A DNA stretch of 63,261 nucleotides, counting the filler, from Octopus bimaculoides (Eukaryota), in the NCBI RefSeq assembly GCF_001194135.2. It is 7 parts of 6 records of this genome, joined end to end, with 100 filler letters (N's around TTAATTAATTAA, not from the genome) between each part and the next. Parts side by side here need not be neighbours in the genome. Positions count along the whole stretch, not along the records: positions 57,290 to 63,261 come from NC_068981.1; 6 more parts are not named here. One strand, given 5' to 3'. Positions 57,724 through 62,594 of the stretch are shown here, piece after piece; position 1 is the first letter of the stretch; every line of letters starts with the position of its first letter. The notes beneath the pieces were generated by a model. The model had not been told where the DNA came from, made no database searches, and saw only the letters and a program-made list of their open reading frames with translations. The translations under genes and the position numbers were made by a program.

Positions 57724-57801
57724 CTGGTGTCTCCATTTCTAAATTCTCTGTCTCTTCGGCCTCAGACTCTACCTCTTCTCGTATCATATTTTCTTCGAAT
57801 T
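57724..57801 (-). CDS. Acidic-repeat exon 4 of 4 (78 nt, phase 1-1): (E)FEENMIREEVESEAEETENLEMETP
   Basis: Minus strand reads ccgtttcatttcactAG|aattcgaag...gacaccag|GTacgg. Only the phase-1 frame is open. Confidence 0.82.
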
Positions 57802-58048
57802 CTAGTGAAATGAAACGGAGGAAATTTATTTTTTAAAGTATTTAGTATTAAATATTTAGTGTTTTATGCTATTTGAGATACAATACAAAAACCATGCACA
57901 AAAAAAAAAAACATATAATGCATCTGATGATTTAAATATCTCTTCGGAACTAGTAAATATCAAAATATTTATGAAAATATACTTTGAAATCTGCGACTTC
58001 TATAACCTAGTGCAGTCTTCACATATTTACAAACGATTATTGGCCACT

Positions 58049-58120
58049 GGCATATGGCGTAGTGGTTAAGAGCGCGGTGCTACTAGCCCTAAGATTCCGA
58101 GTTCGATTCCAAGCAGTGAC
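58049..58120 (+). mobile_element. Isolated tRNA-like insert (SINE head or tailless tRNA retrocopy) with a direct repeat
   Basis: tggcgtagtggttaag (A box) and gagttcgattcc (B box). Flanked by aaacgattattg at 58031-58042 and 58123-58134. Confidence 0.6.
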
Positions 58121-59438
58121 TTAAACGATTATTGCAGCATTTGGTTCTGTTAGTGAATATTTTATTGACGGAATTTCTACGATTTTTCTGCAATGTGATC
58201 ACGTAGGTTGTGCCTTATATTTACAAGGCAGTTGAAAGCGGATCAGTAAAGTAAAGGAAACTTTATTGATAGTCAAATTCATACACCACTCGCTGATGTT
58301 ATCCAGATTCAAGTATTGTAGGTATATATTTTAACAATTAAACCTTTCCGATACAAAAATACTTACCTCACTTCTCAGTATAAATAGAGATTTTTTTAAC
58401 TAGCTAATTTGCTTGTTGCAAGGTCAGCGACTGTGTGTCACTTATTTTCTATATATTGCGAGCGGGAGTGAACTACTGCTATGTCTAGCGAACGAGTATC
58501 CATTACCGGGAATGACCACAAGGAGGTCTAAACTGTAGTCTGGTGGTCATGGAGCTAGAAGATGGCAGGAGTTATCTCCTCGTTTGCAATATATATCGGG
58601 TGTAGATTGTACCGAATAACCAGCTGGAGGAAAAAATAGCAGCAACGTCCGTTCATTGGGAACAATTATGTTTAAGTGGCCTTAAACCTTACTTCTCAGT
58701 ATAGATACTGCTTTCATCTTTTATAGACATTTTCTTAACTAGCTAATTTGCTTGATATAAAAATACATATATTCAAAAAACAAGGAACAAACATTCGGGT
58801 ATGCAACCAATCATTACACGTATCTATTAATACTTGTGTTTAAACATGCAGAAATTTAAAGTTAGATATATGTGTGCGCGTGCATGTGTATGTGTGTGTG
58901 TATACACATCTACATACATTATTACATACATTATATATACATATGTTTGTGAATATATAACTGTATAAATATATGTGTGGGAGTGGGTGGTTAACAGTTG
59001 TTTCGTCTTTTATTTATAGTAATGCGGTTGCTAATTTGTACCCTAATTGACTTTAATAACGATTGCACTTGTGCCTTTTGGCTTTTAAATTGCAAATAGC
59101 CAACTTAATAATATATATAATACACACACACATACAGAGCCAGATGCAAAAAGAGATATTTAGATAGATAGATAAACGGACAAAAAAGCAGACGTATGTA
59201 TGTATGTATGTATGTATGTATGTATGTATGCATGTATACATGTATGTATGTATGTGTGTATGTATGTATGCGTATGTGTCTATACATGTTTGTATACACA
59301 CATATTTTGGATCAATCCATAGTGGAGACGAACATCATTTTTATTTGTGACAAGCTTAAATAATTGAGATATTCCTTAACATGAAACCTATGGTAGCCAT
59401 AAAACAAATAAAGTATGTGTTTATATATGTGTGTATGC

Positions 59439-59470
<32 letters not shown>

Positions 59471-59693
59471 ATATGTATGTGTGTGTATGTATGTATACAC
59501 AGAGAAAGAGAGAGAGAGACAGAGCGAGCGAGGTAGATAGATAGATATGTATATATAGAACACATTTATCCGCAAATATACATATATGTACATATACACA
59601 CACGCACGTGCACGAGCGCATACGCGTACGCACACACACACACACACTCAAATGCACACACTTACACATACACATGCTCACGCATATCAATAC

Positions 59694-59771
59694 CTGGTGT
59701 CTCCAGCTCTAAATTCTCTGCCTCTTCGGCCTCAGACTCTAACTCTTCTGAAATTGTATTCTCCTTGGATT
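59694..59771 (-). CDS. Acidic-repeat exon 3 of 4 (78 nt, phase 1-1): (E)SKENTISEELESEAEEAENLELETP
   Basis: Minus strand reads ttccatttcatttctctAG|aatccaag...gacaccag|GTattg. Only the phase-1 frame is open. Confidence 0.82.
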
Positions 59772-60021
59772 CTAGAGAAATGAAATGGAAGAGAACCATT
59801 AATCAAAATTATAACATTAAACATTTAAAGTTTTTTTCTAGGTTGTTTTCCCTTTGCTACGCTGCCGGGAAATATATTTGTTAATCATACTTTTATAAAT
59901 TGTTTAAAATGAAAATCGTTTTTTTAAAGTTTGTGTCACATTATCTATATGTTAAAAGGCACAGAAATACACACTCACACACACACTTACACACACACTC
60001 ACACACACACACACACACACA

Positions 60022-60071
<50 letters not shown>

Positions 60072-60185
60072 CACACAACCCAAAAAAAACTACATATACT
60101 TAGTCTTTCTTTTAAGTGATGCGTTGCACTTAAAATACCGGCGTTTTAAATCAAAACCTGTTAGTTACTATGGTGACAACACTAC

Positions 60186-60274
<89 letters not shown>

Positions 60275-60333
60275 GTTCTGTCTGCCTATCTATCTATGTA
60301 GCTAGCTATCAAGCTGGTTATCTTTCACGCAGA

Positions 60334-60373
<40 letters not shown>

Positions 60374-60399
60374 NNNNNNNNNNNNNNNNNNNNNNNNNN

Positions 60400-60439
<40 letters not shown>

Positions 60440-60737
60440 TGTATTTCTCTCTCAACAACAACTTTTTCTCCTCCCCTTCTAAAAATACGTTGTGATGTAT
60501 ATTTTGATTCCTCCCTTTCTTTCCCTCCCTCTAATAGATGTTGTGACGCACAGATAGACAGGGATTCACTTCTCTTTTACAATATGTGCTTTGAATATTT
60601 GCTACACAATGCATAACCCATACGTAGTCATACAATGCATATGATATATGGATATGAATATCTCTTATAGGGATTGTGACGCGCCTATGTATGTATGTAT
60701 GTATGTATGTATGTATGTATGTATGTATAATTCATAC

Positions 60738-60815
60738 CTGGTGTCTCCAGTTCTAAATTATCCGTCTCCTCGGTCTCAGGCTCTGACTCCTCTGTTATCG
60801 TATCGTCCTTGAATT
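60738..60815 (-). CDS. Acidic-repeat exon 2 of 4 (78 nt, phase 1-1): (E)FKDDTITEESEPETEETDNLELETP
   Basis: Minus strand reads tttccatttctctAG|aattcaag...gacaccag|GTatga. Only the phase-1 frame is open. Confidence 0.82.
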
Positions 60816-61136
60816 CTAGAGAAATGGAAAGGAAGAAACCTTTTATATAAATTTTTAATGCTAAATATTTAAAGTTTTAAATACCTTTTGAATATTTGAG
60901 ACACAATACAAAAACAATGCACAATCTTACACAGTATTTGAACTGGTAAATATCAGAATAATTACGAACAGGTATTTCAAGAACTAAGCATCTTCAACCT
61001 AGTAAACTCTTCAGATATTTACAAATAGATACTGCCACTCTTGGCTATATTAGTGAATACTTCATTAACGTTCATGAAAGTCTAGGGTTTTCTTGTATAC
61101 AAAGAGGTCCTGTAACATATACTTTACAAGAAGATA

Positions 61137-62399
61137 TAGGGGTTCGACAAAATAATGGAAACACCTTAAAATTTCAAACAAATTTATATTAATATGGGGT
61201 AGGATCGCCTTTGGCAGTATTACACCTTGAATTCTACGTGGTATGGACTCGTACAAAGTTTTAATTGTTTCTAAAGGAATTTTTTCATTCTTCAGCTAAA
61301 ACAGTCTCCAGTTCTTGTAGTGATGATGATGGAGGATATCGACTCCTTAATTGTTTTTCTAAAATGCACCATAAATGTTCAGTAATACTGTGCTCTGGGA
61401 ACTGTGGAAGCCAGATAAGATGTTAAACTTCACTAGAATGTTCCTCGTGCCGTTCAGTAACAACTTTAGCTGTTTGAATTGGTGCATTATCATCCTGAAA
61501 GATTGCGTTTCCCTCCGGAAACAGTTCCGCAACCATAGGATGAATTTGATCAGATAAAATGCTTAAATAGTCTTGACTATTAATTCTGCCATGTAGGGAA
61601 ACTATTGATCCGGCGGATTTCCAAGACATAGCCCCCGCCCCAGATCATCACAGATCCTCCTTCATGTTTAACAGTTGGAAGAAGGCAGTCTGGGTCAAAT
61701 GCTTCTTTTGGCTTCTCCACACGTAAACTTGGTCGGTGGTCGGAAACAAGGTAAAGGATGACTCGTCTCAGAAAATAACACTCTTCCACTGCTCTGGGGA
61801 CCAGGTTTTTACTCCACTCTAAATGCTTTGCAACGTTTGTTTTTGAAAGTAGTGGTTATTTGATTGCAGCCCTTCCATGAAATCCGACTTTGTGCAGCTC
61901 CCGGCGAACAGTTTTTGCGGAAACTGGGTTCTCGAGGTGGTCGTTAAATTCTGCAGTAATTTTTGGAGCTGTACTTTGGTAATCCTTTCTAACAATTCGC
62001 GTAAGAGTCCGTCGGACGCTATCTGAAAATGTTGGTCTTCTTCCGGAATTTTGTTTCGACGAGGAGGTTTTCCCTTTCTCAAAGGCAGTCATTACTTTCG
62101 AGACAGTACTTATTGATACACCAAACATTTCGGCTGTTTTCGTTACATTAGTGCCTGCCATACGAGCACTAACAATTTGACCTCTTTGAAAGTCCGATAG
62201 ATGTGTCATTTTAATGAATTTTAATTACCTTTTTCTGATGATATCTGAAAAGAAACAGCAATTTTAGCAAAGCATATCAAGCAACACTAATAATACATGA
62301 AAAAAACATAAAAATAAACAAGCTTTTGACGGTTTTATAGATATCTCAAAATTATGATGCTACGATGCTAGGTGTTTCCATTATTTTGTCCAACCCCTG
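61137..62399 (-). mobile_element. Full-length decayed Tc1 (DD34E-type) DNA transposon
   Basis: 29-bp TIRs (C/T)AGGGGTT(G/C)GACAAAATAATGGAAACACC at 61137-61165 and 62371-62399, with TA duplications at 61135-61136 and 62400-62401. The frameshifted transposase shows an HTH region (MTHLSDFQRGQIV...), KHEGGSVMIWG, FQDDNAP and EHLWCILEK. Confidence 0.95.
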
Positions 62400-62531
62400 T
62401 ATATGTTTCTGTATACTTATATATGTAATTCACAGCTGGTGTCCCCATGTATGCTTGCGTGCATGTGTAAGTAAGTTTGAGCGGTCATGTGTATGTATGC
62501 ATCCATGAATATATGTATATGTAATTCATAC

Positions 62532-62594
62532 CTGGTGTCTTCAGCTCGAAATCCTCCGTTTCCATGGTCTCAGGTTCTAAGTCCTCTTCTAATT
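62532..62594 (-). CDS. Acidic-repeat exon 1 of 4 in transcript order (63 nt, phase 1-1): (E)LEEDLEPETMETEDFELKTP
   Basis: Minus strand reads ttccattcctctAG|aattagaagag...gacaccag|GTatga. Length is divisible by 3 and the other two frames contain stops. Confidence 0.8.

What the first reader, a model, noticed from the sequence alone, without database searches (positions are those of the whole stretch)
57724..62594. Hidden gene built from four duplicated symmetric mini-exons encoding an acidic repeat
Seen: four paralogous minus-strand exons (63, 78, 78 and 78 nt), each with a pyrimidine tract plus AG, starting AAT and ending ACACCAG|GTA. All are phase 1-1. In each copy only the shared frame is stop-free, and the one length difference (15 nt) is in-frame. 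Spliced, they give ELEEDLEPETMETEDFELKTP-EFKDDTITEESEPETEETDNLELETP-ESKENTISEELESEAEEAENLELETP-EFEENMIREEVESEAEETENLEMETP. Up to about 300 nt of adjacent intron is also homologous between copies but full of indels, so whole exon-intron units were duplicated while the exons kept their frame. None appears in the ORF track. Known: symmetric exons can be skipped or duplicated without frameshift. Inference: a lineage-specific protein with a length-tunable polyanionic, probably disordered segment (ion binding or structural spacer), possibly alternatively spliced. I do not recognise the protein.
Basis: partly seen in the sequence, partly recalled or inferred. Interest (0 to 1): 0.82.

Follow-up and report, generated by a model that had tools for sequence, protein, structure and literature searches.

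The report
Tandem acidic mini-exon array, octopus gene
Four tandemly duplicated 63-78-nt exon-like units on the minus strand are real and look like coding cassette exons from a longer mini-exon array in a barely annotated, apparently octopus-restricted gene encoding a very acidic repeat; this kind of gene architecture is already known, and expression was not tested here.

Summary
Four minus-strand units (62594-62532, 60815-60738, 59771-59694, 57801-57724) each have a pyrimidine tract plus AG, a 63- or 78-nt body open only in the shared phase 1-1 frame, and a CAG|GTA donor. The N gap (60374-60399) lies inside an intronic (TC)n microsatellite and touches no exon.

A neutral simulation gives a joint probability of 0.0006-0.03 that four copies keep all these features.

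One protein among 1.84 billion representatives matches: Octopus vulgaris CAI9715271.1, "hypothetical predicted protein". Its 99-kb locus carries at least 14 distinct units of the same design, 11 intact and 3 decayed. So the window shows a slice of a larger array, not a four-exon gene.

Across 13 units from both genomes, AG and GTA are invariant. The splice-site flanks are more conserved than the exon interior, and third codon positions are the least conserved.

The spliced peptide is 40% Glu with net charge -41 over 99 residues. It has no Pfam or PDB match, and AlphaFold finds only isolated helices.

Best reading: tandem exon duplication building a length-variable polyanionic, largely disordered segment, analogous to titin PEVK/poly-E exons but not a member. 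Transcription, alternative splicing and function remain untested. Interest is moderate to low.

The parts
62532..62594 (-). Unit 1 mini-exon, 63 nt, phase 1-1, encodes (E)LEEDLEPETMETEDFELKTP. It has a 15-nt in-frame deletion relative to the other units.
   Evidence: Acceptor ttcctcgtttccattcctctag|AAT, donor CCAG|gtatgaat. Only frame 2 is open.
60738..60815 (-). Unit 2 mini-exon, 78 nt, phase 1-1, encodes (E)FKDDTITEESEPETEETDNLELETP.
   Evidence: The 20 nt before the acceptor are 95% pyrimidine. Donor CCAG|gtatgaat.
59694..59771 (-). Unit 3 mini-exon, 78 nt, phase 1-1, encodes (E)SKENTISEELESEAEEAENLELETP.
   Evidence: Donor CCAG|gtattgat, with a weaker +5 position.
57724..57801 (-). Unit 4 mini-exon, 78 nt, phase 1-1, encodes (E)FEENMIREEVESEAEETENLEMETP.
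   Evidence: Its 3' 60 nt plus 147 nt of downstream intron align to O. vulgaris L001:40584-40799 (58/60 exon, 133/147 intron).
62595..62945 (-). Intron segment upstream of unit 1, homologous to the segments upstream of units 2 and 4. It is part of the duplicated unit of about 0.5 kb.
   Evidence: Alignment; repeat families D8, D9, D12-D14, D18. Identity of unit 1 to unit 2 is 83%, with 3 indel events.
60816..61135 (-). Intron segment upstream of unit 2, homologous to that of unit 1. It abuts the Tc1 insertion.
   Evidence: Removing the Tc1 element reduces the unit 1 to unit 2 period from 1779 to about 514 bp.
59772..59840 (-). Short conserved 3'-splice-site-proximal intron of unit 3. Further upstream is replaced by microsatellites.
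   Evidence: (D8).
57802..58300 (-). Intron segment upstream of unit 4, homologous to those of units 1 and 2. It is interrupted by an 80-nt insertion at 58043-58122.
   Evidence: (D12-D14, D18).
61136..62401 (-). Decayed Tc1/mariner transposon inserted in the intron between units 1 and 2. It is not part of the gene product.
   Evidence: 32-nt terminal inverted repeats flanked by TA. Pfam HTH_Tnp_Tc3_2 (E 5e-10) and DDE_3 (E 4e-5) on the translated pieces. The reading frame is broken by stops and frameshifts.
60337..60436 (.). (TC)n microsatellite holding the assembly gap 60374-60399, in the intron between units 2 and 3.
   Evidence: There are 18.5 perfect TC copies on each side of the N run.
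62410..62443 (-). Remnant of a unit's 3' end (GACACCAG|ctgtgaattacatata), 96 nt downstream of unit 1's donor, with GT mutated to CT. It is a dead partial copy.
   Evidence: Repeat family D15 (82% to 62506-62539); sequence.

Best explanation
The four units are coding cassette exons. They belong to a longer array of tandemly duplicated exon-plus-intron units, about 0.5 kb each before transposon and microsatellite bloat, inside a large, poorly annotated gene that appears restricted to Octopus.

Each exon is symmetric (phase 1-1, 54-78 nt). It encodes one module of about 26 residues with consensus E-x7-EELESExExTxNLExETP, ending in Pro. The last exon base G plus AA of the next exon forms a Glu codon.

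Spliced in series, the modules give a strongly polyanionic, low-complexity segment: 40% Glu, net charge -41 per 99 residues. It is probably mostly disordered, with Pro-delimited helix-prone stretches.

Module number is set by unequal recombination among the homologous units, that is, by birth and death of exons. Because all exons share one phase, it can in principle also be set by exon skipping.

The most likely role is an electrostatic or entropic spacer, or a cation-binding stretch, of a larger protein.

**Shown:** the exon-like anatomy, paralogy, frame and splice-site preservation, a homologous array in a second genome, and unit turnover.

**Inferred:** transcription and splicing, serial inclusion, disorder, and the biological role.
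For: 1. All four units have a strong acceptor, an open frame in one shared phase, a 3n length and a CAG|GTA donor. Four of the five strong acceptors and four of the five CAG|GTA sites on this strand of the 6-kb piece belong to them.
2. A neutral simulation gives a joint probability of 0.0006-0.03.
3. dN/dS between copies is 0.31-0.81 in the claimed frame, and 1.27-3.45 in frame 1, the one alternative frame that could be computed (5 of 6 pairs; frame 0 failed). Codon position 2 changes least: 15 differences against 36 and 41 at positions 1 and 3, summed over pairs.
4. phmmer against 1.84 billion representatives finds one true relative, P0001 (E 8.5e-15). It is O. vulgaris CAI9715271.1, a gene model in which units of this kind are joined exon to exon.
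5. Its locus L001 holds at least 14 distinct units with the same design. Eleven are intact, including very divergent ones such as ENEQMIKENNAFRESRFTQKQELDIP. Lengths are 54, 75 or 78 nt, all multiples of 3.
6. Across 13 units from both genomes, AG and GTA are invariant. Mean pairwise identity is 0.66 for intron -20..-1 and 0.80 for intron +1..+8. It is 0.47-0.53 for the exon interior and 0.36-0.43 for distal intron. The third codon position is the least conserved, 0.44 against 0.55 and 0.58.
7. The upstream-intron homology is always attached to a unit and in the same orientation. The duplicated block is therefore exon plus intron.
8. Composition is given. AlphaFold2 gives pLDDT 68.8 and pTM 0.26, with only two isolated helices.
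9. Symmetric exons encoding disordered regions often arise by internal tandem duplication (PMC3632108).
Against: - No transcript evidence was accessible. No spliced multi-unit protein other than P0001 exists in the protein collections.
- P0001 comes from an EVM pipeline that mixes transcript, protein and ab initio evidence (PMC10700109), and it shows prediction artefacts. Its Met lies inside a unit. One exon is extended into the translated pyrimidine tract (DFIHSIFL). Its last exon is read out of the acidic frame.
- Between paralogues the exon is no more conserved than the proximal intron: 79% against 83-85% for units 1 and 2.
- Three O. vulgaris units are decayed, including the apparent orthologue of window unit 4, which lost its acceptor and first ~18 nt.
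- Window units 1-3 have no 1:1 orthologue in L001.
- The O. vulgaris locus contains 99.5-99.98% identical internal duplications, one of them inverted. This undermines the gene model's structure.
- The first and last exons, and therefore any domain or signal peptide, are unknown.
Confidence: 0.7

Rival explanations
1. The array is the spring or spacer region of a known giant structural protein, for example a titin/sallimus/twitchin-class muscle protein with a PEVK/poly-E-like segment. Its domain exons would lie beyond the sequence that could be seen. This refines the main reading rather than replacing it.
For: - The architecture matches titin PEVK: about 100 very short exons, each roughly one repeat, expanded by tandem duplication and missed by standard gene predictors (PMC6469411).
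- Units 3 and 4 reach the P+E+V+K+A fraction of at least 0.54 used there as the PEVK criterion (0.62 and 0.58, counted by hand from the peptides).
- Glu content of about 40% recalls titin poly-E motifs (own knowledge).
Against: - No Ig or FN3 exon or gene is called within the 99-kb O. vulgaris locus, and none is evident among its + strand ORFs.
- The composition is almost all Glu: P 6%, V 1%, K 3%.
- phmmer finds no titin-like protein.
- No paper describing a cephalopod PEVK was found.
Confidence: 0.1
2. The array is a dead or dying gene remnant. The units were once coding exons but the locus is no longer expressed, and the copies have simply not yet accumulated disabling mutations.
For: - Decayed units occur in O. 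vulgaris at L001 40588, 52571 and 81214, and a dead partial copy lies at window 62410-62443.
- Exon identity is about equal to intron identity between paralogues.
- No other annotated protein exists in any octopus proteome held by the collections.
- The introns are heavily invaded by transposons and microsatellites.
Against: - All four window units and 11 of 14 O. vulgaris units are intact despite 20-50% nucleotide divergence.
- The splice-site flanks are more conserved than the exon interiors, and the third codon position is the most variable.
- dN/dS is below 1 for all six pairs.
- The joint neutral probability is at most 0.03 for the window alone.
Confidence: 0.12
3. It is a non-coding tandem repeat (a macrosatellite or segmental duplication), or a set of lncRNA exons, whose open frame is a by-product of GA-rich sequence. 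On this reading the O. vulgaris protein is an ab initio artefact.
For: - GA-rich sequence is naturally poor in stops in one frame.
- The P0001 model has clear artefacts.
- There is no homologue outside Octopus.
Against: - All unit lengths are multiples of 3 (54, 63, 75, 78), which requires at least four independent 3n indels.
- Divergence shows codon periodicity.
- Non-acidic, non-GA-rich units such as VVEPKERPTHALRNIILAHKKEMDIP keep the same frame, length and terminal Pro.
Confidence: 0.05
4. The unit is part of a transposable element or another dispersed repeat that carries splice-like signals.
For: - Genome-wide copy number could not be measured.
- The octopus genome is about two-thirds repeats (abstract of PMC13282606, listed).
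Against: - Units occur in one orientation as a local array, apart from one inverted block that is a 99.5% copy of a plus-strand block.
- No terminal repeats or target-site duplications bound the unit, unlike the genuine Tc1 and the 80-nt insertions beside it.
- There is no transposase or reverse-transcriptase similarity.
- Only one matching protein exists among 1.84 billion, whereas transposon ORFs are usually over-annotated.
Confidence: 0.03

Closest known systems
Titin PEVK / poly-E exon array (vertebrate TTN; insect Sallimus PEVK exons)
   Same: - Dozens of very short symmetric exons, each encoding about one repeat of 26-28 residues.
- Glu-rich and disordered.
- Expanded and contracted by tandem exon duplication, with transposons in the introns.
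- Routinely missed or mangled by gene predictors.
- Exon inclusion tunes segment length (PMC6469411; PMC12063666, listed).
   Different: - No PPAK-type motif.
- P, V and K are scarce: 6%, 1% and 3%.
- No sequence similarity.
- No Ig/FN3 context was seen in 99 kb of the O. vulgaris locus.
- Muscle expression is unknown.
Genes of disordered proteins assembled from symmetric exons by internal tandem duplication (general class; Schad, Kalmar and Tompa 2013, PMC3632108)
   Same: Phase-symmetric adjacent paralogous exons encode a predicted disordered, low-complexity region, and modular gain or loss causes no frameshift.
   Different: That study describes human genes. This is an octopus-restricted gene with no characterised product.
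Octopus vulgaris CAI9715271.1 / UniProt A0AA36AH76 (hypothetical predicted protein, 238 aa)
   Same: It is a direct homologue, 48% identical over the matched stretches, E 8.5e-15. It has the same 26-residue modules, the same exon design and the same terminal Pro plus split Glu codon.
   Different: - It comes from another genome, about 90% identical at the one clearly orthologous unit.
- The model is fragmentary and partly mis-framed.
- It spans a region with near-identical internal duplications.
- It has no function or domain annotation.
Pro-punctuated amphipathic helical repeats (exchangeable apolipoprotein 22-mers)
   Same: The repeats are similar in length and delimited by Pro. AlphaFold2 predicts helices for units 3 and 4.
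   Different: - Apolipoprotein repeats lie within one large exon and are amphipathic with balanced charge (own knowledge).
- Here each repeat is its own exon and carries about -10 net charge.
- No sequence similarity was found.

Membership tests
Tandem exon-duplication array of symmetric cassette exons | Adjacent exons are paralogous to each other | tested here: met
   Pairwise exon identity is 71-83%. The units share the consensus E-x7-EELESExExTxNLExETP.
Tandem exon-duplication array of symmetric cassette exons | All exons share the same start and end phase, and their lengths are multiples of 3 | tested here: met
   All are phase 1-1. Lengths are 63, 78, 78 and 78 nt in the window and 54, 75 or 78 nt in O. 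vulgaris.
Tandem exon-duplication array of symmetric cassette exons | Flanking intron sequence was co-duplicated with the exon | tested here: met
   About 320-350 nt of upstream intron is homologous in units 1, 2 and 4, and about 70 nt in unit 3.
Tandem exon-duplication array of symmetric cassette exons | The exons are actually transcribed and spliced, constitutively or alternatively | not testable with these tools
   No transcriptome could be queried. The only indirect support is the EVM gene model CAI9715271.1, whose evidence type is unknown.
Titin PEVK region | Repeats of about 28 residues rich in Pro, Glu, Val and Lys (PPAK motif), with a PEVK(+A) fraction of at least about 0.54 per exon | tested here: not met
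   The overall P+E+V+K+A fraction is 0.535, but this is 0.40 Glu with P 0.06, V 0.01 and K 0.03. There is no PPAK motif. Units 1 and 2 fall below 0.54. The threshold is from PMC6469411.
Titin PEVK region | Embedded in a gene with tandem Ig/FN3 domains (titin, sallimus or twitchin class) | tested here: inconclusive
   No such gene or ORF is seen in the 99-kb O. vulgaris locus, but the array's ends were not reached.
Titin PEVK region | Many short symmetric exons, each encoding about one repeat | tested here: met
Transposable element / dispersed repeat | High copy number, dispersed across the genome on both strands | not testable with these tools
   No octopus genome could be searched. Within 6 kb plus 99 kb the units form a same-strand local array.
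Transposable element / dispersed repeat | Defined termini (TIR or LTR), target-site duplication, or transposase/RT coding capacity | tested here: not met
   The unit has none of these. The neighbouring Tc1 (TIRs, TA duplication, Pfam hits) and the 80-nt insertion (12-nt duplication) do have them.
Any curated protein family (Pfam-A) or solved structure (PDB) | Significant sequence match | tested here: not met
   Pfam gave 0 families at E<=1 for the spliced peptide. For P0001 only a chance-level hit appeared, E 0.13. PDB phmmer gave 0 hits at E<=1.

The most novel reading that the evidence does not exclude
Octopuses carry a lineage-specific giant gene made of dozens of Pro-terminated, about 26-residue acidic cassette exons. 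Genomic copy number and combinatorial splicing would set the length of a polyanionic spring or cation-binding segment. This would be an independent, cephalopod invention of the titin PEVK/poly-E design principle, so far invisible to annotation pipelines.
Probability: 0.12. Interest if true: 0.6.

Novelty: new member of a known kind. Interest (0 to 1): 0.35.

Why it matters
If the units are expressed, this is a previously uncharacterised, apparently octopus-restricted protein region that standard annotation mostly misses. Only one fragmentary, partly mis-framed model exists in public protein collections.

It would be a clean example outside vertebrates of how symmetric mini-exons, tandem duplication and intrinsic disorder together produce rapidly evolving, length-variable protein segments. 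It would also show why such genes are under-annotated in repeat-rich cephalopod genomes.

It opens no new principle. The mechanism is textbook, and the function remains unknown.

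Tried and rejected
- **Word-indexed protein search with the spliced peptide.** No hits. The tool missed even P0001, probably because low-complexity words are not indexed, so this negative result is uninformative.
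- **Two further word-indexed searches** (P0001 itself; a 417-residue concatenation of all unit peptides from both genomes). Only P0001 came back. I could therefore not obtain neighbouring proteins to walk along the O. vulgaris chromosome and find the array's ends.
- **The other two phmmer hits, P0002 and P0003.** These are unrelated repeat proteins at 13-26% identity. Rejected as composition or periodicity artefacts.
- **Exact-product look-up of the window's Tc1 ORF**, to locate the window's own assembly and gain flanks. Not on record.
- **ARAGORN and Rfam.** No tRNA or RNA family was found. The sub-threshold miRNA hits (mir-297 and others) all lie on microsatellites and were rejected.
- **Pfam and PDB searches.** Nothing.
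- **AlphaFold2 without an alignment.** Low pTM. It was used only as weak support for the absence of a globular fold; fold search was not run because the model is too poor.
- **Exon-candidate scan of the whole piece on both strands.** No additional convincing unit between or beyond the four.
- **Stop-to-stop ORF survey of the + strand of L001.** Mostly microsatellite- and transposon-derived ORFs, with no obvious domain exons. It was not followed with Pfam.
- **Literature searches** for a cephalopod PEVK or an acidic exon array. Nothing specific.

Full report
**1. The observation.**

The units are 62594-62532 (63 nt), 60815-60738, 59771-59694 and 57801-57724 (78 nt each). Each follows a pyrimidine tract ending CTAG, starts AAT, ends ACACCAG and is followed by GTA. 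Frames 0 and 1 carry stops in every copy, and only frame 2 (phase 1-1) is open.

MAFFT alignment of the four units with their flanks shows a single exon indel, the 15-nt in-frame gap in unit 1. The upstream intron aligns for about 320-350 nt in units 1, 2 and 4, with 3-5 indel events per pair. In unit 3 it aligns for only about 70 nt.

**2. The assembly gap.**

The N run at 60374-60399 sits in the middle of a perfect (TC)n microsatellite, with 18.5 copies on each side. It is 338 nt past unit 2's donor and 602 nt before unit 3's acceptor. It is intronic and no reading frame crosses it. Because all exons are phase 1-1, the frame of the spliced product does not depend on what the gap hides. What cannot be excluded is hidden extra sequence, even another unit, between units 2 and 3.

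**3. Is it more than chance?**

- On the minus strand of the 6-kb piece, only 5 of 387 AG sites are YAG preceded by at least 85% pyrimidine, and only 5 CAG|GTA sites exist. Four of each are the units' own sites.
- A neutral simulation on a star tree used 8-13% substitutions and 0.4-1.2% indel events per site per lineage, taken from the flanking introns. It gives a joint probability of 0.0006-0.03 that four copies keep AG, GT, an open frame and a 3n length.
- Nei-Gojobori dN/dS is 0.31-0.81 for the six pairs in the claimed frame. In frame 1, the one alternative frame that could be computed, it is 1.27-3.45 (5 of 6 pairs; the frame 0 calculation failed). Second codon positions change least.
- A caveat: at the nucleotide level the exons are no better conserved than the proximal intron, 71-83% against 65-85%. 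Selection, if present, acts on frame, splice signals and acidic character, not on exact sequence.

**4. Relatives.**

The word-indexed search found nothing. The exhaustive phmmer search of 1.84 billion representative proteins found one real relative, P0001 (E 8.5e-15), plus two spurious repeat proteins.

P0001 is Octopus vulgaris CAI9715271.1 / A0AA36AH76, 'hypothetical predicted protein'. It is encoded on chromosome record OX597814.1 at 67,386,818-67,486,295, fetched as L001.

tblastn shows that the model is a chain of mini-exons of the same kind. An nhmmer profile of the window units and a pattern scan find at least 14 distinct units in L001.

- Eleven are intact, at L001 positions 2065, 9987, 16664, 20848, 37186, 42300, 43649, 43903, 80517, 87321 and 89472.
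- Three are decayed:
  - 40588 is truncated at its 5' end.
  - 52571 has AG changed to GG, an internal deletion and no donor.
  - 81214 has lost its donor.
- All intact units are 54, 75 or 78 nt and phase 1-1, and nearly all end in Pro plus a split codon.
- Some are no longer acidic, for example ENEQMIKENNAFRESRFTQKQELDIP and VVEPKERPTHALRNIILAHKKEMDIP, yet they keep the architecture.

Across 13 units from both genomes, AG and GTA are invariant.

| Segment | Mean pairwise identity |
|---|---|
| Intron -20..-1 | 0.66 |
| Intron +1..+8 | 0.80 |
| Exon interior | 0.47-0.53 |
| Distal intron | 0.36-0.43 |
| Codon positions 1 / 2 / 3 | 0.55 / 0.58 / 0.44 |

This is the signature of functional, fast-evolving coding cassette exons.

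**5. How the window relates to the O. vulgaris locus.**

Only unit 4 has a clear orthologue. Window 57574-57792 aligns to L001 40584-40799, with 58/60 identical in the exon and 133/147 in the intron, and a shared (AAT)n microsatellite.

That O. vulgaris copy has lost its acceptor and first ~18 nt. Window units 1-3 are only 76-84% identical to any O. vulgaris unit, which is the same level as between paralogues.

I infer that the window comes from another octopod species, and that the array undergoes birth and death of units. The O. vulgaris units at 42300, 43649 and 43903 would be expected downstream of unit 4, beyond the left edge of the piece.

**6. Caveats on the O. vulgaris model.**

L001 contains near-identical internal duplications.

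| Block | Copy | Identity |
|---|---|---|
| 1-20791 | 53900-74726 | 99.7% |
| 21017-29942 | 86169-77232, inverted | 99.5% |
| 29946-34589 | 94834-99478 | 99.98% |

These are either an assembly artefact or a very recent duplication.

The model itself has three defects. It starts at a Met inside a unit whose frame is open further upstream. It extends one exon into the translated pyrimidine tract (DFIHSIFL). It reads its last exon out of the acidic frame.

The annotation pipeline mixed Iso-Seq, RNA-seq, protein and ab initio evidence (PMC10700109). The model therefore does not prove transcription.

**7. The product.**

The spliced peptide is 40% Glu, 12% Thr, 9% Leu and 6% Pro. Its net charge is -41 over 99 residues, its pI is 4.05 and its GRAVY score is -1.43. 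It has five CK2-type and two S-x-E motifs.

There is no Pfam family and no PDB relative. AlphaFold2 without an alignment gives pLDDT 68.8 and pTM 0.26. It predicts two isolated helices, in units 3 and 4, and coil elsewhere.

The 15-unit alignment gives the consensus E-x7-EELESExExTxNLExETP.

I read this as a polyanionic, mostly disordered segment with Pro-delimited helix-prone modules. A role as a spacer, spring or cation binder is inference only.

**8. Mechanism.**

After removing the Tc1 insertion, units 1 and 2 are about 514 bp apart. The upstream-intron homology always travels with a unit and in the same orientation. The duplicated block is therefore exon plus intron, and unequal recombination between such blocks would add or remove modules without a frameshift.

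Transposons and microsatellites then inflated the introns. A dead partial copy of a unit's 3' end lies at 62410-62443.

**9. Comparison with what is known.**

The design matches the general class described for human genes, in which symmetric exons encoding disorder arise by internal tandem duplication (PMC3632108).

The closest specific analogue is the titin PEVK/poly-E exon array. That array has about 100 short exons, turns over by duplication and is poorly predicted (PMC6469411). Membership fails on composition and motif, and no Ig/FN3 context was seen, so the array works like one but is not shown to be one.

The transposon, non-coding-repeat and dead-array readings are each disfavoured by the evidence in sections 3 and 4. 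Only transcript data and genome-wide copy number can exclude them.

**10. Verdict.**

The feature is real and was described accurately. It is wrong in scope, because the four units are a slice of a much longer array, and the gene is not entirely hidden.

It is a new, uncharacterised member of a known kind of gene architecture. Interest is moderate to low until expression and gene context are established.

Noticed in passing
window 61136-62401 (minus strand): Decayed Tc1/mariner transposon in the intron between units 1 and 2. It has 32-nt terminal inverted repeats flanked by TA and Pfam hits to HTH_Tnp_Tc3_2 and DDE_3. The transposase frame is broken by several stops and frameshifts.
   Followed up: yes
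window 58043-58122 (plus strand), target-site duplication at 58031-58042 and 58123-58134: An 80-nt insertion in the intron upstream of unit 4, flanked by a perfect 12-nt duplication (AAACGATTATTG). By eye it carries tRNA-like A-box and B-box motifs, suggesting a SINE head or tRNA pseudogene. Neither ARAGORN nor Rfam calls it.
   Followed up: partly
window 57292-57606: A 94-residue ORF (MEKLSKYKDLEIEVTRMWNLK...) follows an (AAT)n microsatellite on the minus strand. From memory it resembles the C-terminal tail of invertebrate retroelement ORFs, but Pfam finds nothing. Homology to O. vulgaris ends at the shared microsatellite, so the sequence beyond it differs between the two genomes.
   Followed up: partly
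window 58384-58772: A 32-nt direct repeat (58384-58415 and 58723-58754, 94% identical) brackets about 340 nt. Parts of the region 58450-58772 have 74-81% copies on both strands of L001, near 23.6 kb and 83.4 kb. This looks like an interspersed repeat.
   Followed up: no
window 62410-62443: A partial copy of a unit's last ~10 exon bases plus the start of the intron lies 96 nt downstream of unit 1's donor. Its GT is mutated to CT. It is a relic of an aborted or eroded unit (family D15).
   Followed up: partly
L001 1-20791 / 53900-74726; 21017-29942 / 86169-77232 (inverted); 29946-34589 / 94834-99478: The O. vulgaris chromosome record has 99.5-99.98% identical internal duplications, one of them inverted, across the locus. 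This is either unpurged haplotypic duplication or misassembly, or a very recent segmental duplication. The CAI9715271.1 model runs across them.
   Followed up: partly
L001 10001-89478 (gene model CAI9715271.1): The deposited model has three defects. Its start codon lies inside a unit whose frame is open further upstream. One exon is extended into the translated pyrimidine tract (DFIHSIFL). The last exon is read out of frame (GAAIRGRAGADIGNRNA instead of EELPSEAELEQTSEIEMP).
   Followed up: yes
window 58866-59499, 59603-59673, 60687-60737, 63202-63261: Sub-threshold Rfam hits to mir-297, mir-466 and similar families all fall on (GTAT)n, (GT)n or (TA)n microsatellites. They are composition artefacts.
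   Followed up: yes
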